Shown here piece after piece: positions 9,389 to 54,399 of a DNA stretch of 64,000 nucleotides. The first letter of the stretch is position 1, and the number at the start of each line of letters is the position of its first letter. A program made the position numbers and the translations under genes. This stretch comes from Raja brachyura. Its lineage: Eukaryota. The notes beneath the pieces were generated by a model. It searched no databases. It saw only the letters and a list, made by a program, of their open reading frames with translations, and was not told where the DNA came from. The stretch spans positions 129,828,001-129,892,000 of the forward strand of contig OY740783.1 of NCBI GenBank assembly GCA_963514005.1. Direction: 5' to 3'.

Positions 9389-9778
9389 GCTTTTCGCACG
9401 ATGGTTGGACAATGTCCGGTGCTGATGAGGTATCTGCCATGGAAGGGGCCTCTGCTGTGTTGCCATGTACATTTACCTACCCACCCAATGGTGGCAACGT
9501 CACCGGCTCCGTGTTGTGGCACAACAAGTTGATGCCATCAGAGGCTCTCAGCCTTGTGTTTAAATGCACATATGCCGGTCCCGGCCGCCCCCGATGTGAT
9601 GAAGAGACACAGAAGGCCGGAGGAGGTCGGTTCATATTCGTGGGGAACCTCCCAGAGGGAGATGCCTCGATAATGGTGGAGCCGCTGAGAAAGAATGACA
9701 GGGATAAGTACCGGTGCCGCGTGGAGCTCACTGTTGGGGGTTTTCAATCTGTGATTTTCACGCAGCTGACTGTGGAAG
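9389..9778 (+). CDS. Ig V-set exon D1 of a Siglec-15-like receptor
   Basis: Pyrimidine tract + CAG acceptor, G|GTGAG donor, 390 nt, phase 1-1. Protein WTM..EVSA.EG..AVLPCTFTYP..W..VFKC..C..GRF..VGN...D.SI.VE.L...D...YRCRVEL aligns motif by motif with the Siglec-15 V domain as recalled, including the extra Cys pair and the F-strand Arg (CGC 9718-9720). Confidence 0.93.
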
Positions 9779-10149
9779 GTGAGAGTAATGTTCAGAAACC
9801 GTCGCTGCATCTTGTACAGTGAGTCATAGAGTTATATAGCATGGAAACAGGCCCTTCAGCCCAACTCCTCCATGCTGACCCATCTACACTAAACCGATTT
9901 GCCCATTATTTGACCCACATCCCTTTAAACCTTTTGTATCCATGTACCTGTCCAAATGTCTTTTAAATGTTGTTATAGTCCCTGCTTCAACTACCTCCTC
10001 TGGCAGCTCTCTCTATACATCCACCACCCTCTGTAACTTGAAGATTGAATACTCTAACCAAGTAGCCCTTGCTTCCCCTCTCTCTCCATCCCTCCCCTAC
10101 CTAAGCTTCAAAGTTGTCTTGTGTCTATCTTCAGTGTAAACCAGCATCA

Positions 10150-10500
10150 GGAACTGCAGATGCTGGTTTTACACTGAAGATAGACATAAAATGCTGGAGT
10201 AACTCAGCGGGACAGGCAGCATCTCTGGAGAGAAGGAATGGGTGATGTTTTCGGGTCGAGACACTTCTTCAGACAGAGTCAGGGGAGAGGGAGACACAAA
10301 GATAATGAAGTGTGAAAAGGAGACATCAAAGAGGATAAGTTCAAGGGAAATGTAAAATGATCATTGTGTTAAAGAAGGAACTGCAGATGCTGGAGAATCG
10401 AGGGTTACACAAAAAGCTGGAGAAACTCAGCGGGTGCAACAGCATCTAAGGAGCGAAGGAGATAGGCGACGTTTCGGGTCGAGACCCTTCTTCAGACTGA
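10150..10500 (-). mobile_element. Two nested Penelope-derived short repeats
   Basis: Same sequence family as the tail of the GIY-YIG element at 60090-60185. The inner copy (about 10368-10497) is flanked by duplicated TGATCATTGT. Confidence 0.7.
10465..10500 (-). ncRNA. Minimal hammerhead ribozyme core (Penelope type)
   Basis: Minus strand reads TCAGT-CTGAAGA-A-GGGTC-TC-GACCC-GAAAC-GTC-GCC: CUGANGA, stem II, GAAA, GUC cleavage triplet. Confidence 0.68.
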
Positions 10501-10947
10501 TCATTGTTAGCTAGAAGAAGGTGCCAATGTGCCAAAAGTCTTTTTGACCACCTTATCTACCTGCGACTCGACCTTCAAGGAACCATGCACTGGTACTCCA
10601 AGATCCCTCTGATGACACTCCCCAGAGGCCTACCATTCACTCTTCAGGTCCTGCCCTTGTTAGACTTCCCAAATTTAGAAAGGGCTGCAAGGAAAAGCCT
10701 GCAAACTACAATCCAATGAGCTTAACATCTTTGGTAGGCAAGTTACTGGAGAGTATTCTGAGGTATAAGATATGTATTTGGATAGACAGGGACTGATTAA
10801 GGAGATTCAGCATGGTTTTGTACATGGGAGATTGTCTCACAAATCTGATTGAGTTTTTTGGAGAGGCACCCAACAAGGTTGACGAGGCCAAATCCGTAAA
10901 CGTTGCCTCTGTGGACTTCAGCAAGTCATTTAATACGGCTCCACTTG

Positions 10948-13900
10948 ACAATAGGTGCAGGAGTAGACCATTCAGCCCTTCGAGCCAGCACCGCCATTCA
11001 ATGTGATCATGGCTGATCATCCACAATCAGTACCCCGTTCCTGTATTCTCCCCATATTCCCTGACTCCGCTATCTTTAAGAGCCCTATCTAGCTCTCTCT
11101 TGAAAGTATTCAGAGAACCGACCTCCACTGCCCTCTGAAGCAGAGAATTCCACAGCCTCACAACTCACTGTGAGAAAATGTGTTTCCTCGTCTCCGTTCT
11201 AAATGGCTTACCCCTTATTCTTAAACTGTGGCTCCTGGTTCTGGACTCCCCCAACATCAGGAAAATATTTCCTGCCTCTAGCTTGTCCAAACCCCTAATA
11301 ATCATATATGTTTCAATAGGATACCCTCTAATCCTTCTAAATTCGAGAGTATACAAGCCCAGCTGCTCCATTCTCTCAGCATATGACTGTCCCGCCATTC
11401 CGGGAATTAACCTTGTAAACCTTTGCTACACTCCCTCAATAGCAAGAATGTCCTTCCTCAAATTAGGGGACCAAAACGGCACACAATACTCCAGGTGTGG
11501 TCTCACTAGGGCCCTGTACAACTGCAGAAGGACCTCTTTGCTCCTATACTCGTCTCCAAAATGCCATTCACTTTTTTCACTGCCTGCTGTACCTGCATGC
11601 TTACTTTCATAGACTGATGAACAAGGACCCCCCAGATCCCGTTGTACTTCCCCTTTTCCCAACTTGACGCCATTTAGATAGTAATCTGCCTTCCTGTTTT
11701 TTATACCAAAGTGGATAACCTCATATTTATCCACATTAAACGTCATCTGCCATGCATCTGCCCACTCCCCCAACCTGTCCAAGTCACCCTGCATTCTCAT
11801 AGCATCCTCCTCACAGTTCACACTGCCACCCAGCTTTGTGTCATCTGCAAATTTGCTAATGTTACTTTGAATCCATTCATCCAAATCATTGATGCATATG
11901 GTAAATAGCTGCAGTTCCAGCACCGAGCCTTGCGGTACCCCACTAGTCCCTGCCTGCCATTCTGAAAGGGACCCGTTAATCCCTACTCTTTGTTTCCTGT
12001 CTGCCAAACACTTCTCTATCCATGTTAGCACTCTACCCCCAATACAATGTGCCCTAAATTTGCCCACTAATCTCCTATGTGGGACATTATCAAATGCTTT
12101 CTGGAAGTCCAGGTGCACTACATCCACTGGCTCTCCCTTGTCCATTTTCGTAGTTGCATCCTCAAAAAATTCCAGAAGATTAGTCAAGCATGATTTCACC
12201 TTCGTAAATCCATGCTGACTCGGACCGATCCTGTTACTGCTATACAAATGTGCGGCTATTTCATCTTTCGTAATTGACTCCAGCATCTTCCCCACCACCG
12301 ATGTCAGGCTAACTGGTCTATAATTCCCTGTTTTCTCTCTCCGGCCTTTCTTAAAAAGTGGGATTACATTAGCTACCCTCCAATCCACAGGAACTGATCC
12401 TGAGTCTATAGAACATTGGAAAATTATCACCAATGCATCCACGATTTCTAGAGCCACTTCCTTAAGTACCCTGGGATGCAGACCATCAGACCCTGGGGAT
12501 TTATCAGCTTTCAGTCCCATCAGTCTACCCAACACCATTTCCTGCCTAATGTGGATTTCCTTCAGTTCCACCGTCACCCCAGATCCTCTGGCCACTACTA
12601 TATCAGGAAGGATGTTTGTGTCCTCCTTAATGAAGATGGATCCAAAGTACCTGTTCAACTCATCCGCCATTTCCTTGTTCCCCATAATAAATTCACCTTT
12701 TTCAGTCTTCAAGGGTCCAACTTTGGTCTTAACTATTTTTTTTCCTCTTCACATACCTAAACAAGCTTTTACTATCCTGCTTTATATTCTTGTCCAGCTG
12801 ACCTTCGTACCTCATCTTTTCTCCCCGTATTGTCTTTTCAGTTATCTTCTGTTGCTCTTTAAACATTACCCAATCCTCTTGCTTCCCGCTCATCTTTGCT
12901 ACGTTATACTTGTTCGCTTTAATTTTTATACTGTCCCTGACTTCCCTTGTCAGCCACGGTTGCACATTACTCCCCTGTGAATCTTTCTTCCTCCTAGGAA
13001 CGAACTGATCCTGCACCTTCTGTATTATTCCTAGAAATACCTACCATTGCTGTTCCACTGTCATCCCTGCTAGTGTATCTTTCCAGTCAACTTTGGCCAG
13101 CTCCTCCCTCATGGCCCCATAGTCCCCTTTATTCAACTGCAACATAGACACCTCCTATCTACCCTTCTCCCTCTCCAATTATAGATTAAACCCGACCATG
13201 TTATGGTCACTGCCTCCTAAGGGCTCATTAACCTCACGTTCCTTTATCAAATCCGGTTCATTACACAACACTAAATCCAGAATTGCCTTCTCCCTGGTAG
13301 GCTCCAATACAAGCTGCTCTAAGAATCCATCACAAAGGCACTCTACAAGGTCCCTTTCTTGGGGTCCAGTACCAACCTGATTTTCCCAGTCTACCTGCAT
13401 GTTGAAATCTCCCATAACAACCGCAACATTACTTTTGCTACATGCCAATTTTAACTCCTAATTCAACTTGTGCTCTATGTCCAGGCTACTGTTTGGGGGC
13501 CTGTAGATAAGTCCCATTAGGGCCTTACAATTCCTTAGTTCTATCCATACTGACCCCACATCTCCTGTTTCAATGTCACCCCTTGCAAGGGACTGAATTT
13601 CATTCCTCACCAACAGGGCTACCCCACCCTCTCTGCCCACCTGTCTGTCTTTTTGATAGGAGGTATACCCTTGCAACATCATACTTGCCAACATCTAACT
13701 GAGCCTCAAGCTCGTCCACTTTATTCCTTATACTTTGCGCATTCATATACAACACTTTGACCTCAGTACACACCTCCCTTCTCGCACCGCTCGCAATTGG
13801 CCCTGACCTTACTCCCTTATCGAACTTTCCTTCCCATTAATTTGAGAATCTTTTTTAATTTTTCCCTTCCCCTTCAACTCCACCTTTATACTCCCAATTT

Positions 13901-14440
13901 GTCAATCCCTCCCCCCCACTATTTAGTTTAAACCCACACGTGTAGCCCTAGCAAACCTGCCTGCCAGAATGTCGGTTCCCTTCCAGTTAAGGTGTAACCT
14001 GTCCCATTTGTACAGGTCACCCCTAACCCAGAAGAGATCCCAGTGGTCTATACATCTAAATTCTTGGTCCCTGCACCAGCCCCTCAGCCACACATTCAGA
14101 TCCCCTATCTCCCTGTTCCTGTCCTCACTAGGACGAGGTACTGGAAGCAATCCAGAGATGACCAGCCTAGAAGTCCTGCTTTTCAGTCTTCTTCCTAACT
14201 CTCTGAAGTCGTGTTGGAAAACCCCCTTCCTCTTCTTCCCGATGTCGTTTGTGCCTACGTGCACAACTACTGCCGGCTGTTCCCATTCTCTCTCGAGGAT
14301 GTTCTGAATTCGGCTCGTGACATCCTGCCCCTGGCACCAGGGAGGCCACAGACCATCCTCACGTCTCATCTGCCACCACAGAATCTCCTGTCTGCTCCTC
14401 GGACAATGGAGTTACCCACCACTGTGGCTCTGCCCAACGC
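10948..14440 (-). mobile_element. CR1 (HER1-like) LINE, degraded: ORF1 esterase end plus ORF2 endonuclease and RT
   Basis: VVG(N)SIVRG and VVVHVGTND..DRLHLN (SGNH esterase, 13923-14430); IYRPP and MGDFN (APE endonuclease); NYRPVSLTS, DFQKAFD, GVPQGSVL, KFADDTKL (RT, 11426-12712). Confidence 0.95.
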
Positions 14441-15546
14441 CAGTTGAGTCCCATCTCCAAGATTTACGAGGATGTTGCCAGGACCTGAGCTATGGGGAAA
14501 GTTTGGGCAGATTAGGACTTTATTCCATGGAGCGCAGGAAGATGAGGGGTGACCTTGCAGAGGTGTATAAGATCGTGATGGGAATAGATGGGGTAAATGC
14601 ACAGAGCCTCTGGCCAGAGTAGGGGAATCAAGAGGAGAAAGGTAGGTGAGGGGGGAAAGATTTAATAGGGACCTGAGGGGTAACTATTGTACACAAACGG
14701 GTTGGGTGTATAGAATGAGCTGCCAAAGGTGGTAGCTGAGACAGGTATTATCGCAAGACATTTGGATAGGTACATGGATAGGAAATGTTAAAATGGCCAA
14801 ACGCAAGCAGGTGGGACTAGTCTCGATGGGCATCTTGGTTGGCATGGGCAAGTTGGAATGCACTGCCAGGGGTGGTGGTGGAGGCAGATACTATAGTGGT
14901 GTTTAAGAGGCCTTTAGATCGGCACATGGATACGCAGGAAATGGAGGGATATGGATTGTGTGCAAGCAAAGAAGATCAATTTAATTTGGCTTCATGTTCG
15001 GCACAGACATTTTGGAATGAAGCATCCTCCTGTGCTGTACGGCTCGATGTTCCACGTTTTATAACATTCCCCACCTTTGTTATCAGATTCCATCCTCTAC
15101 ACCCTTTAGTCTTCCCCACTGAACATCTCCAGCCTTGGTCACTACCTCTACGCTTCTTCCATCACCTCACTCATCCCTCTCCTCACCAGGATCTATCTAT
15201 CACTTGTCCAAAGTCTGAAGAAGGGTCTCCACCCAAAACATCACCCATTCCTTTTCTCCAGGGAAGCTGCCTGTCCTGCTGAGTTACTCCAGCATTTTGT
15301 GTCTACCTTCCATCTATCACTTGCCAGCTCTTGCACCACCACTCCCCTCACCTCTTTCTACAGCAATTTCCCCTCTACTCCGTCAGACTGAAGAAAGGAA
15401 CCGATCCGAAAGGTCATCTGTCCATTTACCTCCCCGGATTGCTGGGCTCTTTTCACCACAACCCTCTGTCTTCTATCAGTAAATTAGTTCTGAATCCAAA
15501 TGGTCACGGCACCATTAATCCTTCTGAGTCAGCCTACCATGAAGAG

Positions 15547-16245
15547 TGACACAGTGGAGTTGCTGCCTCACAGCGCCAGAGACCAGGCTTCGATCCCGAC
15601 TACAGGTGCTGTCTGTACGGAGTTTTGTGCGTTCTCCCCGGGACCGCGTGGGTTTTTTCCGGGTGCTCCGATTTCCTGCCACGCTCCAAAAATGTGCAGG
15701 TTTGCAGGTTAATTGGCTTCTGTAAATTATCCCTAGTGCGTGTAAGGTAGTGTTAAGCCCCTGTCCCACTTAGGAAACCTGAACGGAAACCTCTGGTGAG
15801 CTTGCCCGTGACCCAAGGTTTCCATGAGGTCACCGGAGGTTTTGGTCACTCTCTCTAATGGTTGAAAGTGGTTTCCGCTTGGTCAAGGCTTCATCTAGGT
15901 TGCTGCTATTTTTTCATCATGTTTAAAACCGGCCTCGACTAAAAATAGGTTGCCGTTTTAAAAATCAATAATTTTTTAGTGGCAGGTCTATTCGAAGCCG
16001 GTTTTCTTCACAGTCGAGGAAGGTTTTCAACATATGTGTGGGAGGTGGTAGGAAGTTGCAGGTCACCTCGACCTTGATTTTTTTTTGGGTGGCGGGCAAG
16101 GTCACCAGAGGTTGCTGTTTAGGTCTTCTCAGTGGGACAGGGGCTTAAAGGGGCTTAAAAGGTCTCCTGAGTGGGATGATTGCTGGTCGGCACGGACTCG
16201 GAGGGCCGAAAGTCCTGTTTCCACGCTGTATCTTTAAACTAAAAT
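15547..16245 (+). mobile_element. V-SINE interrupted by a Harbinger-type MITE (about 15756-16145)
   Basis: SINE head at 15547-15755 and tail at about 16170-16245; MITE TIRs AGCCCCTGTCCCACT / AGTGGGACAGGGGCT. Confidence 0.78.
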
Positions 16246-16454
16246 AGCATAAAAGATGCTGCCTGACCCGCTGAGTCCCTCCAGCACTTTCTTTTTTGCT
16301 GATGATTCCAGCATCTTCAGTTCCTTGAGTCTACAGGTTTGGCTGGTTGGGTTCTCTGGGGCAGTTTTTAAGCCTCGAATTTTTCCCCGATAAGTTGGTT
16401 GATTGCGGTCGGCGAGGTTCAACTGATACATTCCGGTGTCTGTCCTTCCCTCAG

Positions 16455-16874
16455 CGCCCGGCGGGAATGTCTCAGTGGTGACTGGGACTGTGGGAGGTTC
16501 GGCCACGTTACCCTGTGTGTATCAGCAACCCCAGCGTTACCGCAGCGTCCTCACGGTCACATGGATGAGGAAGGATCCCTACCGACACATCGTCACGTTC
16601 ACACACAAAGCTGATGGATCCTGGGCGGTGGAGAACGGAACAACTCGGTTCGAGCTGGTCGGGGACCCAGAGCTGGGAAACGTCTCAACCAGGATAAACC
16701 AGCTGAGTGTGGAGGACAGTGACGGCTACCAGTGTCTGGTGGAGTTCAGCAAAGGGGAAAACTACGATGCGACAACGTACGTCCACGCACATTTGAGGAG
16801 CAGCGTACACCCCCCGTACACCCATCAGTACCAGCGTGAGGTCCGGCTCCAGGTCCAGCTGCAGGTCACACCCG
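16455..16874 (+). CDS. Ig V-set exon D2 of the same receptor
   Basis: TCCTTCCCTCAG acceptor, G|GTAAG donor, 420 nt, phase 1-1. G.SATLPC, LTVTW, RFELVGDP, D..GYQCLVEF and VRLQV motifs; N-glycosylation sequons NVS, NGT, NVS. Confidence 0.92.
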
Positions 16875-18926
16875 GTAAGAAACCATCGCCACGTTCTGCC
16901 ATGTAGAGCGAAGGTCAATAGTTTGTCTGAACCCCACCCCACCCCCACACATGTGCCGTTCAGTGTAGCTTCCTCTCCCGTGCCCGGACCCTTGCGCTGA
17001 ATGCCGTGTGTGTCACTCCCAGAGTCAGACCGACTAACGGAGTCTGAACCAGTGAGTCGTTATTCATAGAGTCGTGGAGAGTCCCAGGTCCTTCTGCCCA
17101 TGTTGCCCACGCCGACCAACATGCCCCATCAACACTGGTCCCGCCTGTCCACATTTGGCCCATATCCTTCTAAACTTATCCTCCCCAAGAACCTGTCTAA
17201 ATGTCTCTTAAATGTTGCAAGAATCCCTGCCTCAACTACCTCCTCCTGCGGCTCTTTCCTTACACCCACCAATCTTTGTGTAAAAAAAGTTACCCCTCAG
17301 ATTCCTATTAAATCTTTCCCGCCTCACCTTAAATCTATGTCAGGTGGTTCTGGATTCCCCAACTCTGGACAAAAGACTGTGTGTGTTTCCCCGATCTATT
17401 CCTCTCATGATTTTTATACACCTCTATAAGATCGCCCCTCATCCTCCTGCGCTCCAAGGAATAATGTCCTAGCCTGCTCAACGTCTCCCTACAGCTCAGC
17501 ATGTCAAGTCACATCCTTGGTAACACCCTTGCAAATCATCTCTGCATCCTTTCCAGCTTGACAACATCGTTCAAGTTCAAATGTATTTGTCACATGCACC
17601 ATAAGGTGCAGTGAAATGTGATTTACCATGCAGTGTTACAATTAAAAAAGGACATAGTACACAATGTAATTCAACACACATCCACCACAGCATTCTTCAC
17701 TGTGGTGGAAGGCAATACTGTTCAGACAGTCCCGTACATGGTGACCAAAACTGAACACAATATTCCAAATGTGGCCTCTCCTATGTCTTATACAACAGTA
17801 ACATATCCTCCCAACTTCCATACTCAATACTCTGACTGATGAAGACCAATGTGCCAAAAGCCTTTATGATCACCCTATCATCGGCTGATATTCAATCACA
17901 GCTGATCTGTCTTTCCCTCTCAACCCCATTCTCCTGCCTTCTCCCCATAACCCCTGATACCAAAACCAGTCAAGAATCTATGAATCTCCGCCTTAATAAA
18001 TATTCATTGACTTGGCCCCCATGCCCGTCTGTGGTAATGAATTCCACAGATTCACTACCCTGTGACTCACGAAATATCGCCTCAACTCCTTCCTAAAGGT
18101 ACATTATTTTATTCTCAGGCTATGGCCTCTGATCCTAGACTCTCCCACTAGTGGAAACATCATCTCCACATCCATTCTTTCCAGGCCTTTCACTATTCAG
18201 TGAGTTCCGCCCCTCATCCTCAACTCCAGCAAGTACAGGCCCAGTGCCGTTCTAACGTTCATCATATGTTAACCCAATGAATAAGTTTATGAATGAATAA
18301 ATGAATGAAGGAATTAGTTTATTGGCCAAGTATTCACATACAAGGAATTTGCCTTGGTGCTCCGCCCGCAAGTGACAACATGACATACAGTGACAGTTAA
18401 GAATGATACATAAAACATTAAACATTAATAATAAAAAATTCCTGGGATAATTCTTGTAAACCCCCTCTGGACCCTTTCCAGAGCCAGCACATCCTTCCTC
18501 AGATATGGGGCCCAACATTACTCACAATACTCCAAATGCGATCTGACCAGTGCCTTGCAGAGCATTCCATCCCTGTTTTTGTATTATAGTCCTTCTGAAA
18601 TAAATGCCAGCATTGCATTTTCCTTCCTTACCACCCATTCAACATGCAGATTAACGTTTTGGGAAACCTGCACCAACACTCCCAAGACCCTTTACATCTC
18701 TGGTCATTCAGTCAAGTCCAATGTCCGCTATGGTGTAGAGGTGACTCGGATAGTACCCTATCTCATGGAAGGACTGTTCAGACAGTGCATCTTATCCCTC
18801 AGAATACTGTCTCGTAACTTTCTGACCACAGATAGTTAGACTCACAGCACTGTCATTCCCAGGATTTTCCCAGCCACCCTTCTTAAACAGAGGCACAACA
18901 TTTGCCACCCTCCAGTCTCGTCATTT

Positions 18927-19235
18927 AGGGCAGCACGATGGCGCATCGGTAGAGTTACTGCTCTACAGTGCCGGAGACCCGGGTTCGATCCAGACTATGG
19001 GTGCTGTCTGAGCGGAGTTTGTACGTTCTCCCCGTGACCTGCGTGGGTTTTCTCCAAGATCTTTGGTTTCCTCCCACACTGCAAAGTCGTACAGGTTTGT
19101 AGGTTAATTGGCTTGGTATAAATGTAAAACATTGTCCCTAATGTGTGTGTAGGACAGTGTTAATGATGTCCGTGTGAACTCGGCGGGCCGAAGGGCCTGT
19201 TTCCACGCTGTATCTCTAAAATAAATGAAACTAAA
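18927..19235 (+). mobile_element. V-SINE
   Basis: A/B boxes, core and tail as at 2573. Confidence 0.85.
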
Positions 19236-19384
19236 TTTAGATCATTTACCTTAATTCACAAGCAAGTTAGAAATGGCGTTCGCACATCCGAGTTATTTGA
19301 TGGATCATCATTGATCATATGTTAAGGCCGGGTGTGAACACATGGGCCTACTGATCTCCTGGTCTTCACTGCTCTTTTTTACAG

Positions 19385-19480
19385 TGACACCCATCCAAAC
19401 ATCAATATATATCCTGCGCATTCTTCTTCTCATCCTCGTGCTCTGCATTCTGTCTATCATTATCCTCTGGAATAAAGGAG
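19385..19480 (+). CDS. Transmembrane exon with intramembrane Arg
   Basis: CTCTTTTTTACAG acceptor, GAG|GTGAGT donor, 96 nt, phase 1-1; encodes VTPIQTSIYILRILLLILVLCILSIIILWNKG. Confidence 0.88.
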
Positions 19481-19492
19481 GTGAGTTGACCT

Positions 19493-19634
19493 CTTCTTCT
19501 CCTTGCGTATGGCGTGCACAGCCTAAAGTTGTAGGACAACTTGTTCTATTTGATCTTATTTGATTGTGCACGCCGGGATGATTGCATTTGTTGAAACAGG
19601 GCGGACCACGTGAAGATTGCAATCTCCCACCCCC
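19493..19634 (-). mobile_element. Short retroposon with 12-bp TSD at the TM splice donor
   Basis: GTGAGTTGACCT duplicated at 19481-19492 and 19635-19646; (GAA)n-like tail on the minus strand. Confidence 0.75.
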
Positions 19635-20360
19635 GTGAGTTGACCTACAAATAAGCCATTGCAATTCTCTGTCTGCTATCGATTATTATTGTCCCTTGCA
19701 CCGGGATGCAGCGATCAGCTTTGTTTATGTGCTATCGTTTGTCTTTAATCGGACGTCCACACTTCAAGCTGCCTCGGCAAGACCACCGGCATAATCAAGG
19801 ACCGGTCTCACCCCTCTACTCCCCTCTAGTGAAGTAAGAGTTTAATTGTTTCACTTCCGAACTCATGACAACAAAACACAATTGACTCACATTAAGCAAG
19901 AGGTACAGAAGTGTGAAAACACACACCTCCAGGTTCAGGGACAGTTTCTTCCCAGCTGTTATCAGCGGTCCTGATCTCCCATCTACCTCATTGGAGCTCT
20001 TTGAGCTAACTTTAATCGGACTTTACTGGACTTTATCTTGCACTAAACGTTATTCCCTTTATCCTGTATCTGTACACTGTGGACGGCTCGATTGTAATCA
20101 TGTATAGTCGTTCCGCTGACTGGATAGCACGCGACAAAAACAACTTTTCACTGCATCTTGGCACACGTGACAATAAAGTAAACTAAACTACGCTAAACTA
20201 ATCTAAAGCTATCCAGTCATATAATAATATACATGAGTACAGAGTACCAGTACAAGTGTTGCAAAGAGAAAAATGCAGAATATATGTTATTGTGTTAAAT
20301 TTTCAGAAAAAAAGTGCATGGTAGATAATGAGGTAGGTTGGGGGATTGGGTCAGTATCCT

Positions 20361-21430: not shown

Positions 21431-21596
21431 TGAAGTGCTCAACATTAGCCGTAGCTACAATGTGGTCAGTTCAGCCGGTCTGAAGGAGAAAAACCCAGTA
21501 AACTCTTCATACTTCACTTTAGTTTAGTTTATTGTCACGTGTCCCGGGAGCAACGCACCTCAGCAACTGCTGGGGGCCGTGGGGGGAGATTCAACG

Positions 21597-24500
21597 GGTG
21601 GGGAGAGTGGGTGAGGGGGGGAGAGTGGGTGAGGGGGGGGGGAGAGTGGGTGAGGGGGGGAGAGTGGGTGAGGGGGGGGGAGAGTGGGTGAGGGGAAAGT
21701 GGGTGAGGGGGGGAGAGTGGGTGAGGGGGAGAATGGGTGAGGGGGGGAGAGTGGGTGGGGGGGAGACAGTGTGTGAGGGGGGGAGAGTGGGTGAGGGGGG
21801 AGTGGAAGAGGGGGGGGAGTGGGTGAGGGGGGGAGTGGGTGAGGGGGGGAAGAGTAGGTGGGGGGGTAGTGTGTGAGGGGGGGGGCGAGTGGGTGAGGGG
21901 GGGAAGAGTGGGTGAGGGGGGGAAGAGTGGGTGGGGGGGGAGTGGGTGAGGGGGGGGCGAGTGGGTGGGAAGAGTGGGTGAGGGGGGAAGAGTGGGTGAG
22001 GGGGGCGAGTGGGTGAGGGGGGAGAGTGGGTGAGGGGGGAGAGTGGGTGAGGGGGGAAGAGTGGGTGAGGGGGGGCGAGTGGGTGAGGGGGGAGAGTGGG
22101 TGAGGGGGGAGAGTGGGTGAGGGGGGAGAGTGGGTGAGGGGGGAAGAGTGGGTGAGGGGGGCGAGTGGGTGAGGGGGGAGAGTGGGTGAGGGGGGAGAGT
22201 GGGTGAGGGGGGAGAGTGGGTGAGGGGGGAAGAGTGGGTGAGGGGGGAAGAGTGGGTGAGGGGGGCGAGTGGGTGAGGGGGGGCGAGTGGGTGAGGGGGG
22301 AGAGTGGGTGAGGGGGGAGAGTGGGTGAGGGGGGAGAGTGGGTGAGGGGGGAGAGTGGGTGAGGGGGAGAGTGGGTGAGGGGAGACAGTGTGTGAGGGGG
22401 GGGAGAGTGGGTGAGGGGGGGGAGTGGAAGAGGGGAGAGTGGGTGAGGGGGGGGACAGTGGGTGAGGGGGGAGAGTGGGTGAGGGGGGAGTGGGTGAGGG
22501 GGGGGGAGTGGGTGAGGGGGGGAGTGGAAGAGGGGGGGAAGAGTGGGTGGGGGGCGAGTGGGTGAGGGGGGGGAGTGGGTGAGGGGGGGGCGAGTGGGTG
22601 GAAAGAGTGGGTGAGGGTGGGAAGAGTGGGTGAGGGTGGGAAGAGTGGGTGAGGGGGGGGCGAGTGGGTGAGGGGGGGCGAGTGGGTGAGGGGGGAGTGG
22701 GTGGGGGGGGAGTGGGTGGGGGGGGAGTGGGTGAGGGGGGGAGGAGTGGGTGAGGGGGGGAGGAGTGGGTGAGGGGGGGAGGAGTGGGTGAGGGGGGGAG
22801 GAGTGGGTGGGTGAGGGGGCGAATGGGTGGGGGGGAGTGGGTGAGGGGGGGAAGAGTGGGTGAGGGGGGGCGAGTGGGTGAGGGGGGAAGAGTGGGTGAG
22901 GGGGGAAGAGTGGGTGAGGGGGGAAGAGTGGGTGAGGGGGGGAAGAGTGGGTGAGGGGGGAAGAGTGGGTGAGGGGGGAAGAGTGGGTGAGGGGGGGGAA
23001 GAGTGGGTGAGGGGGGGAAGAGTGGGTGAGGGGGGGAAGAGTGGGTGAGGGGGAGTGGGTGAGGGGGAGTGGGTGAGGGGGAGTGGGTGAGGGGGGAGTG
23101 GGTGAGGGGGGGCGAGTGGGTGAGGGGGGGGCGAGTGGGTGAGGGGGGGCGAGTGGGTGAGGGGGGGAGTGGGTGAGGGGCGGGAGAGTGGGTGAGGGCG
23201 GGGGAGTGGATGAGGGGGGGAAGAGTGGGTGAGGGGGGGGAGTGGGTGAGGGGGGGGACAGTGTGTGGGGGGGGGAATGGGTGAGGGGAGACATTGTGTG
23301 GGGGGGTGAGTGGGTGAGGGGAGAGCGTTTGTGAGTGGGGAGAGTGGGTGAGGGGGGAGAGTGGGTGAGGCGGGAGAGTGGGTGAGGGGGGAGAGTGGGT
23401 GAGGGGGGAGAGTGGGTGGGGGGAGAGTGGGTGAGGGGGAGAGTGGGTGAGGGGAGACAAGTGGGTGGGGGGGAGAGTGGGTGAGGGGGGAGAGTGGGTG
23501 AGGGGGAGAGTGGGTGAGGGGGGGGAAGAGTAGGTGGGGGGGAGTGTGTGAGAGTGTGTGAGGGGAGGAGTGGGTGAGGGGGGGAGTGAGTGAGGGGAGG
23601 AGTGGGTGAGGGGGGGAGTGAGTGAGGGGAGGAGTGGGTGAGGGGGGGGAAGAGTAGGTGGGGGGGGAGTGGGTGGGGGGGGCGAGTGGGTGAGGGGGGG
23701 AAGAGTGGGTGTGGGGGAGAGTGGGTGGGGGGGGGAAGAGTAGGTGGGGGGGAGTGTGTGAGAGTGGGTGAGGGGAGGAGTGGGTGAGGGGGGGGGAGTG
23801 AGTGAGGGGGGGAGTGGGTGAGGGGGGGGAAGAGTAGGTGGGGGGGAGTGTGTGGGGGGGGGCGAGTGGGTGAGGGGGGGAAGAGTGGGTGGGGGGCGAG
23901 TGGGTGAGGGGGGGCGAGTGGGTGAGGGGGGGCGAGTGGGTGAGGGGGGGGAGTGGGTGAGGGGGGGAAGTGGATGAAGGGGAGTGGGTGAGGGGGGGAG
24001 TGGGTGAGGGGGGAGTGGGTGAGGGGGGGGGAGTGGATTGGGGGGGCGAGTGGGTGAGGGGGGGGGAGTGGGTGAGGGGGGGAAGAGTGGGTGAGGGGGG
24101 GAAGAGTGGGTGAGGGGGGGAAGAGTGGGTGGGGGGGGAGTGGGTGAGGGGGGGGAGTGGGTGAGGGGAGAGTGGGTGGGTGAGGGGAGAGTGGGTGTGT
24201 GAGGGGGAGCGAGTGGGTGTGTGAGGGGGAGCGAGTGGGCGAGGGAGGGGCGAGTGGGCGAGGGGGGGAGTGGGTGAGGGGGGGAGTGGGTGAGGGGGGG
24301 GCGAGTGGGTGAGGGGGGGGGCGAGTGGGTGAGGGGGGGGCGAGTGGGTGAGGGGGGGGCGAGTGGGTGAGGGGGGGGAGTGGGTGAGGGGGGGAGTGGG
24401 TGAGGGGGGGGAGTGGGTGAGGGGAGAGTGGGTGTGTGAGGGGAGAGTGGGTGTGTGAGGGGGAGGGAGTGGGTGAGGGAGGGGCGAGTGGGCGAGGGGG

Positions 24501-24700
24501 GGGAGTGGGTGAGGGGGGGAGTGGGTGAGGGGGGGGAGTGGGTGGGGGGGAGTGGGTGAGGGGGGTCGAGTGGGTGAGGGAGGGGCGAGTGGGTGGTAGG
24601 GGAGTGGGTGAGGGGGGGGAAGAGTGGGTGAGGGGAGAGAGTGTGAGGGGGGGAGAGTGGGTGAGGGGGGGAGTGGGTGAGGGGGGGAGTGGGTGAGGGG
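21597..24700. repeat. G-rich minisatellite, about 3.1 kb, unit about GAGTGGGTGAG(G)n, 15-20 bp
   Basis: Directly visible; the + strand is almost free of C. Confidence 0.98.
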
Positions 24701-24813
24701 TTGGAGATTGCCTTTGGGCTGTAACTTTGATGAATCTTTATTATTCTACATTTGTTATCCAATGTGGATGTCAGCCATTACCTTAATCTTTTCTCATCTC
24801 TTTATTCCTGCAG

Positions 24814-24832
24814 TGTTTTCATCCGTAATGAG
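24814..24832 (+). CDS. Candidate cytoplasmic micro-exon (VFSSVMR)
   Basis: Long pyrimidine tract + CTGCAG acceptor, GAG|GTCAGT donor, in non-repeat DNA; phase 1 to 2. Confidence 0.55.
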
Positions 24833-24883
24833 GTCAGTCACATTTTCAAAAAGGTAATAGGGGACATGAATCCAAGGCTAAGC

Positions 24884-25533: not shown

Positions 25534-25603
25534 GAGTGCTGTGAATCCGGATGACACTGGCCGAGGGGAACAGCTGCAGAGTGCCACAAGACAGCTACCA
25601 TAG
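25534..25603 (+). CDS. Candidate cytoplasmic exon running into a Rex1 insertion ([22 protein letters not shown])
   Basis: TTCCTCTCTCTGTAG acceptor; open in phase 2, matching the preceding micro-exon; stop TAG at 25601-25603 lies in Rex1 sequence. Confidence 0.5.
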
Positions 25604-27989
25604 TGCCGGTGCCGACAAAGTCTAAAGTCACCAATCTGAATGACTATCGCCCGGTTGCCCTAACTCCAATACCAATGAAGTGCTTTGAAAGGCTGGTCCT
25701 CTCCCACATCAAATCCATTATTAAGCCATAATTAAGGAAGCCTTTTTGGAACAAAGTCAGCTCAGAGCTGGCTTCCATTGTTCCAAAATAATCAATTCTG
25801 CATTCGGTTTCAGTTTTATTTTGAATAATTTTGTAAAAATTTCAAAGATATCATTCCAGAATTTTTGGATTTTTATGCAAAAAACAAAGGAATGAGCTAT
25901 GGTTGCTTCTTGGGATAGACATTTATCACAAATTGGGGAGACATTTGTTTTGAATAATATAGTCTATGTAAGGTTTTAAATTGGATTAAAATATGTCTTA
26001 CATTGATCGAGCATTTATGCACATATAGCAAGTGTTTGTCCCAACTCTCTTTCAAGATTTTTATAGCTAGTTCTTGTTCCCAATCTCTTCTAATTCTATC
26101 AGATGATGATATTTCTATATTTAGGATAATATTATACGTATGATATTAAATTAGTTGAATCTGCCTTTATATTCGTTGCTTCGTCTAATAAGCCTGGAGA
26201 CAAATTTTGATATTCTTGTGTATATTTTTTCAAATAATCACGAATTTGAAAATATTTAATATATTGATTACTTTTCCGATTGTATTTAAGTTGTAGTTGC
26301 TGGAATGATAAGAAATTTCCATTTTCATACATATCTCCGAACGTTTTAATTCCTATTCTTTCCCAATATGTAAATGATTTATCAATACTAGAAGCTTTAA
26401 ACGAGGGATTATTAACCATAGGGGTGAGAAGTGATACGTTTTGTAATTTAAGGGTTAATTTTATTTGTTTCCAAATTCTAATAGTACTATGAATAATTGG
26501 ATTTTCACTATATATTGTTTTATTCAGTTTTGTTGGTGAGAGAAGGATCACTCCTATATTAAAAAGGGCGCAATCCTCTCTCTCCATTACTATCCAATCC
26601 GCCCACTGGGCAGAGTCGTCCAACAAGTGAATCACATTTTTGACGTTTGCTGCCCAATAATGATACCAAAAATTAGGGAGTGTTAATCCACCAAATTCTT
26701 TAGGTTTGCACAAATGTCTACTTTGAATTCTATGAGATTTATAGTCCCATATAAAATTTATAATATCAGAATCCAGTTTTGTTTTTAAACTTTTTAGATA
26801 AGTATATTGGTATTGATTGGAATAGATATAAAATTTGTGGTAAAAAGATAATTTTTATAGCATTTATTCGTCCTATTAAAAACATCGGAAGAGTTTTCCA
26901 AAACTTAATCAGGGTGTTTAATTTGTTACGTAGGGGCATATAGTTTGCATTAAATAAAGATTTATATTTGCTGGTAATTTCAATTCCCAAATATTTAACT
27001 GGGCCCGCACCTGTCCTCCACTATCACCCTGAGCACCGGCACACCACAGGGCTGTGCACTGAGCCCCATGTTCTACTCCCTCTTCACACACGACTGTGTT
27101 CCTGCATTCGACACCAACACCATAGTCAAGTCGGGCAGATCACCAACGGTGATGAAACAAAATACAGAGCGGTGGTGCAGAACCTGGCGGACTGGTGCTT
27201 ACTTAACAACTTGTCACTAAACACCTCCAAGACCAAGGAGCTGATTATCGACTTCAGGAGATCACGAAATGAGGAATACGCCCCAATCTCCATCTACGAG
27301 GACAGTGTGGAAAGAGTGCCCAGCTTTAAATTTCTGGGCACTCACATCTCAGAGGACCTCACATGGTCCACCAACACCGCTGCGCTGGTCAAGAAGGCAC
27401 AGCAACAACTGTGCTTCTTGAGAACATTGAAAAAGACTGGTCTGCCCCAGCAGCTGCTGACAACCTTCTACCGCTGCACGACAGAGAGCATACTAACGTA
27501 TGGCATCTCTGTGTGGTATCTCAGCTGCATGGAGGCGGAGAGCAGAGCTCTTCAGCGCGTCGTCCACAGAGCGCAGAGGATTATTGGGACACAGCTACCA
27601 GCCTTGGAGGTCATCTGCCACACACAGTGCCTCAGGAAAGCCGTCAGCATCCATAAAGACTCCTCACACTCTTGTAATGGACTGTTCGAACTACTTCCTT
27701 CCGGAAGGCGTTACAAGGCCTTCTACGCCCGCACCTCCAGACTCAGGAACAGCTTCATTCCCAGAGCTATAGCAGCTCTGAACCGGCCCTGCTGAGTGCC
27801 CCCCCCCACCCATGGACTGTCTCCCAAGGATGGTCACGTCGCACAGACACATCTGCACTTTAGTCTGTTCTGACTGTTTTACTGTTTTAATGTTCTTTTT
27901 ACAAACCATGTTCTCGGGGTATCTAAATCTAAATTGTAGTAGTTATTTAAGTTATGACATCGGATGTAAGCTGCATATATTATTATTAT
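25588..27989 (+). mobile_element. 5'-truncated Rex1 LINE containing an inverted L1 fragment
   Basis: [31 protein letters not shown] from 25588; RT C-terminal ORF to 27795 (LNTSKTKELIIDFR..LPSGRRY..RLRNSF); (TAT)n tail. Confidence 0.9.
25719..26998 (-). mobile_element. L1-clade LINE ORF2 internal fragment
   Basis: ORFs 26766-26990 (GRINAIK..LPQILYLFQ) and 26132-26713 (GGLTLPNF..YWAA) are homologous to ORF2 at 32418-36200. Confidence 0.88.
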
Positions 27990-35400: not shown

Positions 35401-36204
35401 TCCTTATCCTTTAATATCTGGGGATTAAATCTCCAAGTAGTCGTTTTATTAAGTATATCTTTTAGTTTTATCTTGAATGTTAGTGGCGCATGATCTGAAA
35501 TAATAATATTATGATATTTTGCGTCATACGTAAAAGGTAGTAATTTTGAATCTATTAAAAAATAATCTATCCTAGAATAGGTTCCATATACGGGCGAAAA
35601 AAACGAGTATTCTCGTCCGGATGGATTATCTAGTCTCCAAATATCCTTAACATTCGATGTATTAATAAAAGAATTTATAAGTTTACTTGAATTAGAGGTA
35701 GCTTTCCTTTTTGTAGAAGACCTGTCTAGGTAGCTATCTAAGGTGCAATTAAAATCACCCCCAATAACTAAATTATATTGAGTGGAAATAGGAATATTAT
35801 TAAATATTTTCTTAAAAAATAGTGGGTTATCAAAATTAGGGGCATATATATTCACCAAAATTATTTTCTGTGAATATAATTCCCCTGTAATTATTACATA
35901 TCTACCCTCTTTGTCCTCTATTATAGAACTTTGTTTAAAAGGTATACCTTTACGGATAATTATTGCAACTCCTCTAGATTTGTGTATAAATGAAGAGTGA
36001 TATACCTTGGAAATCCATTTTGCTGTTAATCTATGTTGAGCATCTCTTTTAAGATGAGTCTCTTGAAGGAAGATCACGTCTGATTTCAATCTGTTCAACT
36101 GTGCTAGCACCTTTCCCCTTTTAATTGGTTCGTTAATTCCCTTAACATTCCAACTACAGAAGGTAATTCCACCCCCCCCCAGTCTTCACATTCATGTCTT
36201 GCAT
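32418..36204 (-). pseudogene. L1 ORF2 (APE endonuclease, RT, C-terminal Cys domain), disrupted
   Basis: SWNVKG, FLQETH, GGDFN, SRIDY, SDH; DAEKAFD, RQGCPLSP, YADD. In-frame TAA at 34062-34064 and 33684-33686; frameshift in the G-run at 36172-36180 near the start. Confidence 0.92.
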
Positions 36205-36813
36205 TTTACTGTTAGGGTGGTTTTTTTTGGAGTAGCCTTCTCGACCCCTCCAGCCCAGCGGTATACCCAAACGCCAACCCGATGAGAATTTCTATCCTCA
36301 GTAATCCATATACATATCTTCTTAAAGCAATTATACAATATCGCTCATAACTACATTCATATAATATATAACATAAAATCAAATATTTAATATATAAGAA
36401 AAAATACAAAGTGTAATTAAAAAAAGAGAAAAGGGTGTTAACAGGGTGCCCAGAAAAAAAAGAAACTACACTGATATATTGTGTAGTGTGCATTAGTGAG
36501 AGCCACACTAGCGTGGCTATTAATCTACTGACTTCCGTTTTTTAAAAAAAAGATGTTAAATGTTCCAGCTCCTGTCTATAATGCTGTGTATATTGGGGTG
36601 GGGTACTAACTTTAAGTACTTAGTAATTATTTCTATTATTCATATTACTAATTACTAGTTATTAATTTCTATTATAATTAATATTATAATAAGTAATACT
36701 ATATTAGGGGGACAATTGAAATTTTACTAATTAATACCAAACTATAACAACATGTCCATTATTGCCCCTCTTTCTCAATGAATAATTCATAACCGCAGGT
36801 CGGTGATAAAAGT

Positions 36814-37916: not shown

Positions 37917-38648
37917 TTTGAATTTCTTACCGAAGTCGCGCGCCTGATGACATCACGCAGCTTGCAATTGCACCGGAGCCGTTTAGAATCGCTCTCCTGC
38001 GGTAAGTACCCCCGATTTTTTTCAGATTTTTGTGGAGCTGATCTGGCGCTGTTCTCTCTCAGAACATGGCGCCACCGGAAGTCCCCTCCCTGCAAGGATT
38101 CTATGATGTGGAACTCAGTGCAACAGACGGTGATGGAGGCCAAGTCATTGGCTATTTTTAAGGCGGAGATCGACAGTTTCTTGATTAGTGAGGGTGCCAA
38201 AGGTTATGGGGAGAAGGCAGGAGAATGGGATTCAGAGGGAAAGATAGTTCAGCCATGATTGAATGGTGCAGTAGCCTCGATGGGCCAAATGGCCTAATTC
38301 TGCTTCTATCACATGAAATTATGATACTCATGAGAGGAATACATTGCGTAAATGCAGTCTTTTACCCCAACTGGGGAATCAAGGACCAGAGGATGTAGGT
38401 TTAAGTTGAGAGGGGAAGGACTTAATAGGAATCTGTGGGGAAATTTTTATACATAGAGGGTGCTGGGTGTGTGGAACGAGCTGCCAGAGGAGGTAGCTAC
38501 TATCATAATGTTTAAAAAAACATTTGCACAGGTACATGGATAGGAAAGGTGGGACTAGTGTAGATGGGGCATGTTGGTTGGTGTGGGCAAGTTGGGCCGA
38601 AGGGCCTGTTTCCAGTCTGTATCATTCTAAGACTGATTGGTGTTACAG

Positions 38649-39742: not shown

Positions 39743-39772
39743 GTGAGCAGAAACCTGAAGCTGCAAATTCAG
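39743..39772 (+). CDS. Candidate micro-exon (GEQKPEAANS)
   Basis: TTCTCCTTTACTTCCAG acceptor, CAG|GTGAAA donor, 30 nt, phase 1-1. Confidence 0.42.
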
Positions 39773-39923
39773 GTGAAAATGATTCTGTTCCTACTTTGCT
39801 TTAGTTGAGTTTAGAGATACAGCGTGGAAACGGGCCCTTCCGCTCACCGTGTCCGATCCCCGCACCGACCAGCGATCCCCGCACATTAACACTACCCTAT
39901 ACTAGGGGACAATTTTGACATTA

Positions 39924-44420: not shown

Positions 44421-44539
44421 CTGCTGTTATTTCTGTTTGTAATGTTTTATAATTAATATAACCTCCTGTGTGGGAGGGAATCGATGGGACTATGCGACTG
44501 ACAGACATAACGGAAGAGTCTTCTCCTCTGCCTCTACAG

Positions 44540-54390: not shown

Positions 54391-54399
54391 TGATGAAAC

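What the first reader, a model, noticed from the sequence alone, without database searches (positions are those of the whole stretch)
9389..19480. Siglec-15-like receptor with non-canonical V-V-TM architecture and no C2 domain
Seen: three phase-1 exons with canonical splice sites join in frame into V1-V2-TM. The DNA between V2 and TM is CR1/SINE debris with no Ig exon visible. Known: Siglecs normally have a V-set followed by C2-set domains, and Siglec-15 is V-C2-TM(Lys). V1 keeps the Siglec-15 hallmarks (aromatic A-strand W, AVLPCTFT.P, extra Cys pair, YxCRVE Arg). Inference: a member of a chondrichthyan Siglec-15-related receptor family made by V-exon duplication and C2 loss.
Basis: partly seen in the sequence, partly recalled or inferred. 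Interest (0 to 1): 0.8.

Follow-up and report, generated by a model that had tools for sequence, protein, structure and literature searches.

The report
Skate Siglec-15-like two-V receptor gene copy
This is a real copy of a shark-and-ray immune receptor gene related to the sialic-acid receptor Siglec-15, built from two V-type domains with no C2 domain; the build is typical of a large family that databases already predict, but this copy has lost its inhibitory tail and may be decaying.

Summary
Three phase-1 exons (V1 9389-9778, V2 16455-16874, TM 19385-19480) have AG/GT sites and open frames. Both Ig exons are V-set, and no other Ig exon lies anywhere in the 64 kb.

V1 carries the Siglec-15 hallmarks (Trp6, Cys59-Cys69 pair, Arg110). 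Its model best matches the Siglec-15 crystal structure (TM 0.82).

The build is not peculiar to this locus. At least 85 automatic gene models from skates, rays and sharks have V1-V2-TM or V1-TM. They come either with a Lys-bearing, Siglec-15-like TM and a stub tail, or with a neutral TM and a long ITIM tail. This scan already found the same family at several other loci of this genome. I found no paper on it.

Elasmobranch V-V-C2-TM proteins exist, and their second V is sister to V2 (100/99). This supports C2 loss in the family.

Its TM and tail exons are of the inhibitory type, but with Pro->Arg in the TM. A LINE fragment abuts the exon 5 donor, no ITIM is left, and no leader exon lies in the window. 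No RNA data were available. This copy is either decaying or an ITIM-less variant.

The parts
9389..9778 (+). V1 exon (phase 1/1): Siglec-15-type V-set domain, 129 full codons. Trp6, Cys26-Cys109, extra pair Cys59-Cys69, Arg110 (codon 9718-9720).
16455..16874 (+). V2 exon (phase 1/1): second V-set domain, 139 codons. Leu94 stands where V1 has Arg, there is no extra Cys pair, and the F-G loop is 22 residues long (residues 100-121).
19385..19480 (+). Transmembrane exon (phase 1/1), TPIQTSIYILRILLLILVLCILSIIILWNKG. It is the inhibitory-type TM of the family, with Arg (codon 19417-19419) where the skate relatives P0003 and P0151 have Pro.
24814..24853 (+). Cytoplasmic exon 4, (V)FSSVMRSVTFSK, acceptor cag|TG, donor AG|gtaata, phase 1 to 2.
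25534..25603 (+). Cytoplasmic exon 5, (R)[15 protein letters not shown]. The expected phase-1 end is at 25580, with a weak donor A|gtgcca. If that donor is not used, the frame runs on to TAG at 25601-25603 (..SATRQLP*).
25582..25731 (+). LINE reverse-transcriptase fragment that abuts the exon 5 donor (..[37 protein letters not shown]..).
   Evidence: 54% identity over 46 aa to the LINE RT ORF at 53844-54554(-), E 1.5e-11
39743..39806 (+). Remnant of a tail module, (G)EQKPEAANSGENDSVPTLL*, next to P0151 GEQKLEAANSDQDESCTYASI. The ITIM tyrosine is absent and a stop follows. AG lies in front, and a possible GT donor lies at 39773.
11429..14411 (-). LINE (RT and endonuclease ORFs) that fills much of the V1-V2 intron.
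21540..24780 (.). Minisatellite of 17-18 nt period inside the TM-exon 4 intron (GC 0.71, GC skew 0.96).

Best explanation
The locus is one copy of a large gene family of sharks, skates and rays that descends from a Siglec-15-like ancestor. Family members have a Siglec-15-type V domain (V1) on top of a second, different V domain (V2) with a long F-G loop. V2 joins directly to the membrane anchor; the C2 domain of Siglec-15 has been lost.

The family comes in two signalling forms. One has a Lys-bearing, Siglec-15-like TM and a stub tail (activating type; DAP12-type adaptor inferred). The other has a neutral TM and a long ITIM tail (inhibitory type).

This copy belongs to the inhibitory branch by its TM, exon 4 and exon 5. 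However, it carries Arg in place of Pro in the TM. A LINE fragment sits at the exon 5 donor. Only a tyrosine-less remnant of the ITIM modules is left, and no leader exon lies within 9.4 kb upstream.

Inferred working, if it is expressed: V1 binds a sialylated ligand through Arg110, and V2 acts as stalk or second contact surface. The receptor cannot signal through ITIMs. It is then either an adaptor-coupled (activating-like) receptor through the TM Arg or a silent receptor.

My odds: member of this family with the V-V-TM build, 0.9. State of this copy: decaying or recently disabled, about 0.45; expressed ITIM-less receptor that signals through the TM Arg, about 0.3; expressed but signalling-dead, about 0.15; still inhibitory with exons I missed, under 0.1.
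For: Shown:
- Exon structure and open frames.
- Both Ig exons are V-set.
- The best solved relative of both is the human Siglec-15 V domain (E 3.1e-11 and 4.3e-09).
- The V1 model has pLDDT 90 and its top fold hit is 7zoz_A, TM 0.82.
- The V2 model has pLDDT 86 and a V-type fold.
- There are 201 relatives at E<=1e-3; the nearest are skate proteins at 70-77% identity.
- Junction residues match annotated skate proteins: window TVE-A-PGGNVSVV against P0151 TVEAPGGNVSVV; V2 runs straight into TPIQ..TM.
- Family survey: Lys TM (CIPLGLKT..LLVMG) goes with tails of 3-47 aa, all but one without an ITIM-like motif. The neutral TM usually goes with tails of 80-250 aa carrying 1-4 ITIM-like motifs. No neutral-type TM has Arg or Lys.
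- Tree: window V1 and V2 lie inside the skate clades, and V2 is sister to the second V of V-V-C2 proteins at 100/99.
- C2-bearing elasmobranch proteins are collinear with mammalian Siglec-15 and with skate family members.
- Tail exons, the LINE junction and the ITIM remnant.
- No ITIM-like motif lies downstream on the + strand.
- A leader HMM built from 34 family leaders finds nothing in the window.

Inferred: sialic-acid binding, adaptor pairing and expression.
Against: There is no transcript evidence. The run search found no RNA holder, and the runs laid were DNA contigs that cross exon borders. The leader exon is missing from the window, so the model is 5'-incomplete. The tail is disrupted, which fits a pseudogene as well as a converted receptor. 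In the V-domain tree, V1 does not group with bony-vertebrate Siglec-15 or with the first V of V-V-C2 proteins, although that grouping is not rejected (AU p 0.12). The alignment has only 128 columns. G-strand and Tyr87 contacts of human Siglec-15 are not conserved in V1. Arg in the TM could be a neutral single-base change (CCC to CGC is my guess at the ancestral codon).
Confidence: 0.7

Rival explanations
1. Decaying pseudogene: a tandem duplicate of an inhibitory family member that has lost its leader and its ITIM tail. It is no longer expressed, and the intact V1, V2 and TM frames only reflect recent loss of constraint.
For: No leader is found in the window despite a very conserved family leader. 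A LINE fragment lies within 7 nt of the exon 5 end, leaving a weak donor. The ITIM module remnant has lost its Tyr and carries a stop, and the other ITIM exons are absent. The end branches of window V1 and V2 (0.27, 0.20) are longer than those of the skate relatives (about 0.1).
Against: About 1 kb of coding sequence in five exons has no stop or frameshift, and nine of the ten splice sites fit the consensus well (the exon 5 donor GTGCCA keeps its GT but is weak). All structural residues are kept: both Cys pairs, the Trp residues and Arg110. The leader may simply lie upstream of the window.
Confidence: 0.45
2. New activating receptor made from an inhibitory one. The TM Pro->Arg change recruits an ITAM adaptor (FcR-gamma/CD3-zeta type, given the Arg near the outer leaflet), and loss of the ITIMs completes the switch. 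This would be a second, independent route to activation beside the family's Lys-type TM.
For: Arg at residue 11 of the TM exon stands where P0003 and P0151 have Pro. None of about 45 neutral-TM relatives has a charged TM residue. The tail lacks any tyrosine motif. The ectodomain is intact. Known precedent, from general knowledge: activating KIR and Ly49 genes arose from inhibitory ones by gaining a TM charge and losing the tail.
Against: There are no expression data and no test of adaptor pairing. A single base change in a possibly dead gene is an equally simple reading. Whether related species keep the Arg could not be read from the contigs.
Confidence: 0.3
3. Not Siglec-related: a member of another V-domain receptor group (pIgR/CD300-like, NITR-like, JAM/CAR-like, TIM-like), as some automatic names of relatives suggest.
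For: NCBI names of relatives include pIgR-like, JAML-like and HAVCR1-like. By fold, V2 is closest to CRIg, nectin-4 and TIM-1. By sequence, V2 matches CD276 and pIgR almost as well as Siglec-15.
Against: V1 matches Siglec-15 far better than any other solved protein: 46 bits against 32 for Siglec-8, 24 for NKp30, 23 for TIM-3 and 14.5 for PILR-beta. The top fold hit is Siglec-15. The Siglec-15-specific Cys pair and the Arg are kept. The family's Lys TM resembles the Siglec-15 TM. V-V-C2 relatives are collinear with Siglec-15. All Siglec-15-like V domains form one clade at 99/98.
Confidence: 0.05
4. A C2 exon exists but was missed, because it is diverged or lies elsewhere, so the true protein is V-V-C2-TM.
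For: V-V-C2-TM relatives exist in a ray and in sharks. There are no RNA data here.
Against: There is no Ig-like hit outside V1 and V2 in 64 kb. The V2-TM intron is high-copy repeat. The nearest annotated skate proteins go from V2 straight into the same TM sequence.
Confidence: 0.03

Closest known systems
Siglec-15 (human Q6ZMC9, structure 7ZOZ; orthologs in mammals, lungfish, sturgeon and teleosts, and V(-V)-C2-TM(Lys) proteins of whale shark and devil ray)
   Same: V1 is a V-set domain with the A-strand Trp, the canonical Cys pair, the Siglec-15-specific C'-C'' Cys pair and the F-strand Arg. It is the best sequence and fold match. The family's activating members have a PLG.K..LLL TM like Siglec-15.
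   Different: There is no C2 domain; a second V domain takes its place. This copy has a different TM exon, with Arg rather than Lys and at another depth. It also has remnants of an ITIM tail, which Siglec-15 never has. It is a paralog, not the ortholog.
Elasmobranch two-V Siglec-15-like gene models (e.g. Leucoraja erinacea LOC129695285, Amblyraja radiata LOC116971354 / LOC116971356; automatic names only)
   Same: The exon plan V1-V2-TM-tail is the same. V1 and V2 are 70-77% identical, the junction residues are the same, and the TM, exon 4 and exon 5 sequences are of the same type.
   Different: Pro->Arg in the TM, ITIM exons missing or decayed, a LINE fragment at the exon 5 donor, and no leader seen.
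Paired CD33-related Siglecs (Siglec-5/14, 11/16) and PILR alpha/beta
   Same: Sialic-acid-type V domains are shared between an ITIM-bearing and a charged-TM partner. The tree shows signs of sequence exchange between partners within a species (L. erinacea V2 domains).
   Different: Those have C2 domains (Siglecs) or a single V (PILR). The family here has V-V or V alone.
Activating KIR / Ly49 derived from inhibitory genes (general knowledge)
   Same: An inhibitory-type gene gains a TM charge and loses its tail.
   Different: The Ig domains are unrelated, and function is unproven here.
NITRs of bony fish (general knowledge)
   Same: A multigene family of V-containing receptors in fish, with activating and inhibitory forms.
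   Different: No J-like FGxGT motif is seen in the G strands of V1 or V2. The best relatives are Siglec-15, not NITR.

Membership tests
Siglec-15 (ortholog) | N-terminal V-set domain with the essential F-strand Arg (R143) next to the canonical Cys | tested here: met
   Y-R-C109-R110-V-E aligns with Y-F-C142-R143-V-E. Role of R143 from PMC10264397. Fold match to 7zoz_A, TM 0.82.
Siglec-15 (ortholog) | Extra C95-C104 disulfide (C'-C'' region) and A-strand Trp44 | tested here: met
   Cys59, Cys69 and Trp6 align with C95, C104 and W44. This is at sequence level only; the bond itself was not checked.
Siglec-15 (ortholog) | A membrane-proximal C2-set domain | tested here: not met
   The second domain is V-set. 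No C2 or I-set exon lies anywhere in the window.
Siglec-15 (ortholog) | TM lysine for DAP12/DAP10 pairing and a tail without ITIM | tested here: not met
   The TM exon is the family's neutral type with one Arg. Tail exons 4 and 5 are of the ITIM-bearing type.
Siglec-15 (ortholog) | Groups with Siglec-15 orthologs in a tree | tested here: not met
   V1 lies in the Siglec-15-like superclade (99/98) but outside the clade of bony-vertebrate Siglec-15. C2-bearing Siglec-15-type proteins coexist in elasmobranchs.
Siglec-15 (ortholog) | Arg-dependent sialic acid binding | not testable with these tools
   Needs V1-Fc on a glycan array with an R110A control.
Elasmobranch Siglec-15-like V-V paired receptors (public gene models, no paper found) | V1 and V2 domains of the family's two clades, joined without a C2 | tested here: met
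   Window V1 lies in the clade at 99/94 and V2 in the clade at 100/99. They are 70-77% identical to skate members.
Elasmobranch Siglec-15-like V-V paired receptors (public gene models, no paper found) | Conserved leader M.SLRVCLCTVLLSVSV.G | tested here: not met
   An HMM of 34 leaders scores 8 bits at best, on the wrong strand. The leader may lie upstream of the window.
Elasmobranch Siglec-15-like V-V paired receptors (public gene models, no paper found) | Either a Lys TM with a stub tail, or a neutral TM with an ITIM tail | tested here: inconclusive
   The TM is the neutral type but carries Arg. Exons 4 and 5 are present. The ITIMs are absent or decayed.
NITR (bony fish) | J-like FGxGTxL motif in the V domain G strand (recalled from memory, so a lead only) | tested here: not met
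   The G strands read ..SVIFTQLTVE and ..YQREVRLQVQLQV.
PILR | A single Siglec-like V domain closest to PILR alpha/beta | tested here: not met
   PILR-beta scores E 0.23, 14.5 bits, against 46 bits for Siglec-15. There are two V domains.

The most novel reading that the evidence does not exclude
An inhibitory receptor caught while turning into an activating one. In a family that already has a Lys-type activating partner, this copy of the ITIM branch has gained a TM Arg and lost its ITIMs, partly through a LINE-associated break at the exon 5 donor. This would create a second, independently evolved adaptor-coupled form, possibly pairing with a different adaptor (FcR-gamma/CD3-zeta type rather than DAP12 type).
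Probability: 0.25. Interest if true: 0.6.

Novelty: new variant of a known kind. Interest (0 to 1): 0.45.

Why it matters
Siglecs are textbook V-plus-C2 receptors, and Siglec-15 is regarded as a conserved, single-copy, activating member. Sharks, skates and rays instead hold a large Siglec-15-derived family. It lacks the C2 domain, has a second V domain with a long variable loop, and comes in both activating and inhibitory forms. That is a paired-receptor system at the base of the jawed vertebrates, and no paper I could find describes it. It gives a natural test of what the C2 domain does, of how old sialic-acid-based self/non-self sensing by paired receptors is, and of how inhibitory receptors become activating. 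This locus adds one possible snapshot of that last step. On its own it is only one more, possibly dying, copy.

Tried and rejected
- RNA evidence: the run search found no RNA holder. The four runs laid were DNA contigs that cross exon-intron borders, so no junction could be tested.
- Some of those contigs carry a patch at 16784-16795 (HAHL to DEKF, as in skate activating paralogs) and a 12-nt in-frame deletion at 16850. I took them for paralogs or relatives and drew no conclusion on constraint.
I therefore could not fetch the Leucoraja or Amblyraja loci to compare the exon 5 donor, the ITIM exons or the leader-intron length.
- Leader search by tblastn and by HMM found nothing.
- Searches for ITIM exons by tblastn (PAM30 and PAM70) and by motif found only the remnant at 39743.
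- A Lys-type TM exon is not present in the window.
- Six literature searches found no description of the family.
The N run 62414-62582 was left alone.
- Rejected readings: a pIgR, CD300, NITR, TIM or PILR affiliation, and a hidden C2 exon.
Full report
**The observation.**
- V1 is 9389-9778, V2 is 16455-16874 and TM is 19385-19480.
- Each has a pyrimidine-rich AG acceptor and a GT donor.
- Each begins with two bases that finish a codon and ends with one base, so all are phase 1.
- The inner frames are open: 129, 139 and 31 codons.
- The split codons read Ala (G|CG) and Val (G|TG).
All searches were made exon by exon.

**Nature of the two Ig exons.**
- Pfam calls both Ig exons V-set (E 1.1e-07 and 3.1e-13).
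- The two are 28% identical to each other.
- The third exon encodes TPIQTSIYILRILLLILVLCILSIIILWNKG, a membrane span with one Arg.

**No hidden Ig exon.**
The set includes proteins with C2/I-set domains.
- Ten + strand ORFs of the two introns show no Ig domain in Pfam.
- The four public runs laid on 16200-19700 were DNA, because their contigs run across exon borders. Summed contig depth is about 10-100 over V2 and TM but 1e3 to 1e6 over 17019-19241, so the intron is high-copy repeat.
- The V1-V2 intron holds a LINE on the minus strand (RVT_1, E 9e-30).
- More than half of each intron has further copies inside the window.

**What V1 and V2 are.**
- Against all solved structures, the best sequence match of both exons is the V domain of human Siglec-15, 7zoz_A (E 3.1e-11 for V1, 4.3e-09 for V2).
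- For V1 the margin is clear: 46 bits, against 32 for Siglec-8, 24 for NKp30, 23 for TIM-3 and 14.5 for PILR-beta.
- In that alignment, Trp6, Cys26, Cys59, Cys69, Cys109 and Arg110 of V1 stand at W44, C64, C95, C104, C142 and R143 of Siglec-15.
- The structure paper names R143 as the sialic-acid salt-bridge residue, W44 as a ligand contact, and C95-C104 as a disulfide peculiar to Siglec-15 (PMC10264397).
- An AlphaFold model of V1 (pLDDT 90) has 7zoz_A as top fold match (TM 0.82, rmsd 2.6). Sialoadhesin and Siglec-8 follow.
- V2 (pLDDT 86) is a complete V-type domain. It has Leu94 at the Arg position, no extra Cys pair, and a 22-residue, low-confidence F-G loop before a long G strand.
- By fold, V2 is a generic V domain (CRIg, nectin-4, TIM-1; Siglec-15 at rank 12).

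**The family.**
- A scan of 1.84 billion representative proteins with V1 gave 201 relatives at E<=1e-3. The top ones match in two stretches, V then V.
- A search with the skate protein P0003 returned 88 relatives, all from sharks, skates and rays. They cover at least 15 species, including Leucoraja, Amblyraja, Rhinoraja, Hypanus, Hemitrygon, Mobula, Narcine, Pristis, Heterodontus, Hemiscyllium, Chiloscyllium, Scyliorhinus, Rhincodon, Cetorhinus, Mustelus and Heptranchias.
- Their names are automatic and mixed: uncharacterized, Siglec-15, Siglec-12, pIgR-like, sialoadhesin-like, JAML-like.
- The nearest to the window are skate proteins, 70-73% identical in V1 and 70-77% in V2.
- Their sequences run from V1 into V2 and from V2 into the TM at the same residues as the window's exon ends. 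The window reads TVE-A-PGGNVSVV and P0151 reads TVEAPGGNVSVV; both have ..TPIQ.. at the start of the TM exon.
- The family falls into two forms:
  - About 35 have a TM of the type CIPLGLKT..LLVMG with a Lys, and a tail of 3-47 aa, all but one without an ITIM-like motif.
  - About 45 have an uncharged TM, usually with a tail of 80-250 aa carrying one to four ITIM-like motifs (SCTYASI, VIYAAV).
  - Some members have V1 only.
- The Lys TM resembles that of Siglec-15 (mammal LPLGALGLKVLLLVG, teleost LPLGAKVLLLL).

**V duplication and C2 loss.**
- Bona fide Siglec-15 of a mammal, a characin and a lungfish is V(-V)-C2-TM(Lys).
- Elasmobranchs have such proteins too: whale shark P0093 (V-C2-TM Lys), devil ray P0043 (V-V-C2-TM Lys) and sevengill shark P0027 (V-V-C2-TM-ITIM tail).
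- P0093 is collinear with mammalian Siglec-15 over V and C2 (E 6e-20).
- P0027 is collinear with the skate family member P0151 over both V domains (E 1e-38). It also shares the C-terminal IYAAVV motif.
- I built a maximum-likelihood tree of 74 V domains, rooted on conventional Siglec V domains.
  - All Siglec-15-like V domains form one clade (99/98).
  - The family's V1 domains form one clade (99/94) that holds the window's V1.
  - The family's V2 domains, with the window's V2, are sister (100/99) to the membrane-proximal V of the three C2-bearing proteins.
- The family's V1 does not group with the first V of those proteins in the best tree. That grouping is not rejected, however (AU p 0.12).
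- The alignment has only 128 columns, so deep branches are weak.
- My reading is that the V-V tandem predates the family and that the C2 exon was lost in the family.

**What is particular to this copy.**
- The gene does not end at 19480.
- By homology to the skate inhibitory proteins P0003 and P0151, a 40-nt exon lies at 24814-24853. It encodes (V)FSSVMRSVTFSK, has AG and GT sites, and goes from phase 1 to phase 2.
- A further exon starts at 25534 and encodes (R)[15 protein letters not shown].
- The TM exon is of the inhibitory type: 71% identical to P0151 over 31 residues and 75% to P0003 over 24. Arg (CGC, 19417-19419) stands where both relatives have Pro.
- None of the neutral-TM relatives surveyed has a charged TM residue.
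- Exon 5 should end in phase 1 at 25580. The donor there is a weak GTGCCA.
- From 25582-25588 onward the DNA is a LINE reverse-transcriptase fragment, 54% identical over 46 aa to the LINE ORF at 53844-54554(-) (E 1.5e-11).
- If the donor is not used, the frame stops at 25601-25603.
- No ITIM-like motif occurs in any + strand frame downstream of the TM exon.
- The only further trace of the tail is at 39743-39806: GEQKPEAANSGENDSVPTLL*, next to P0151 GEQKLEAANSDQDESCTYASI. It has no tyrosine and ends in a stop.
- An HMM built from 34 family leaders (M.SLRVCLCTVLLSVSV.G) finds nothing in the window. The leader exon is therefore either more than 9.4 kb upstream or gone.

**How it most likely works.**
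- Shown: the domain build, the family membership, the inhibitory-branch origin of the TM and tail exons, and the loss of ITIMs.
- Inferred: V1 binds a sialylated ligand through Arg110. V2 holds V1 away from the membrane in place of the C2, and may add a second contact through its long, variable F-G loop.
- Without ITIMs this copy cannot recruit phosphatases.
- If it is expressed, the TM Arg lies five residues into the span, near the outer leaflet. From general knowledge, FcR-gamma or CD3-zeta partners usually have an Arg there. It could therefore couple the receptor to an ITAM adaptor.
- Equally, the missing leader, the broken tail and the longer tree branches fit a copy that has recently died.
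- About 1 kb of open frame in five exons, with nine of ten splice sites close to consensus, argues that any loss of constraint is recent.
- My odds: decaying, 0.45; activating-like through Arg, 0.3; expressed but silent, 0.15; still inhibitory, under 0.1.

**Comparison with what is known, and novelty.**
- This is not Siglec-15. The C2 domain and the TM Lys are not there, and a C2-bearing Siglec-15-type gene coexists in elasmobranchs.
- It is a member of a Siglec-15-derived paired-receptor family whose build (V-V or V, no C2) is not in the Siglec literature that I could search.
- The family is nevertheless present in public automatic annotations of many species.
- Earlier notes of this scan report the same family at several other loci of this genome. 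Those notes are unchecked by me, except that my own searches reach the same family.
- The finding is therefore real and of moderate interest, but it is not unique to this window.

**Limits.**
- No RNA data were available.
- The species is unknown beyond 'skate-like'.
- The tree rests on short domains.

Noticed in passing
window 44443-44655 and 45980-46342 (+): The first is an ORF with a C2H2 zinc-finger piece (..TGEKPFECPNCHESFARNSTLKCH..; Pfam zf-H2C2_2 E 2.4e-04, below cut-off). The second is an ORF with no Pfam hit. I did not test that.
   Followed up: partly
window 34065-37926 (-): A long L1-like LINE. ORF2 has endonuclease and RT (Exo_endo_phos 4e-16, RVT_1 3e-30) and a coiled-coil ORF1-like frame lies upstream. 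A further 421-aa ORF at 32421-33683(-) continues it.
   Followed up: partly
window 21540-24780 and 48100-50800: Two large minisatellite arrays. The first has a 17-18 nt period and is G-rich on the + strand (GC 0.71, skew +0.96). The second is C-rich (GC 0.76, skew -0.55). Both give long spurious ORFs in several frames.
   Followed up: partly
window 50992-51993 (+): An ORF with a phage-integrase N-terminal SAM-like domain (Phage_int_SAM_4, E 3e-06), probably a tyrosine-recombinase retroelement or Crypton-type remnant.
   Followed up: no
window 16784-16795 and 16850 (V2 exon): DNA contigs of three runs carry a clustered patch that turns HAHL into DEKF, the residues of skate activating paralogs. 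One run also carries a 12-nt in-frame deletion in the QVQLQV repeat. These look like paralogs or gene conversion between family members.
   Followed up: partly
proteins P0003/P0156 (L. erinacea) in the tree: The V2 domains of the inhibitory and activating partners of one species are closer to each other than to their counterparts in Amblyraja. This is the pattern expected from sequence exchange between paired receptors.
   Followed up: no
window 62414-62582: A run of 169 N (assembly gap or masked), left untouched.
   Followed up: no
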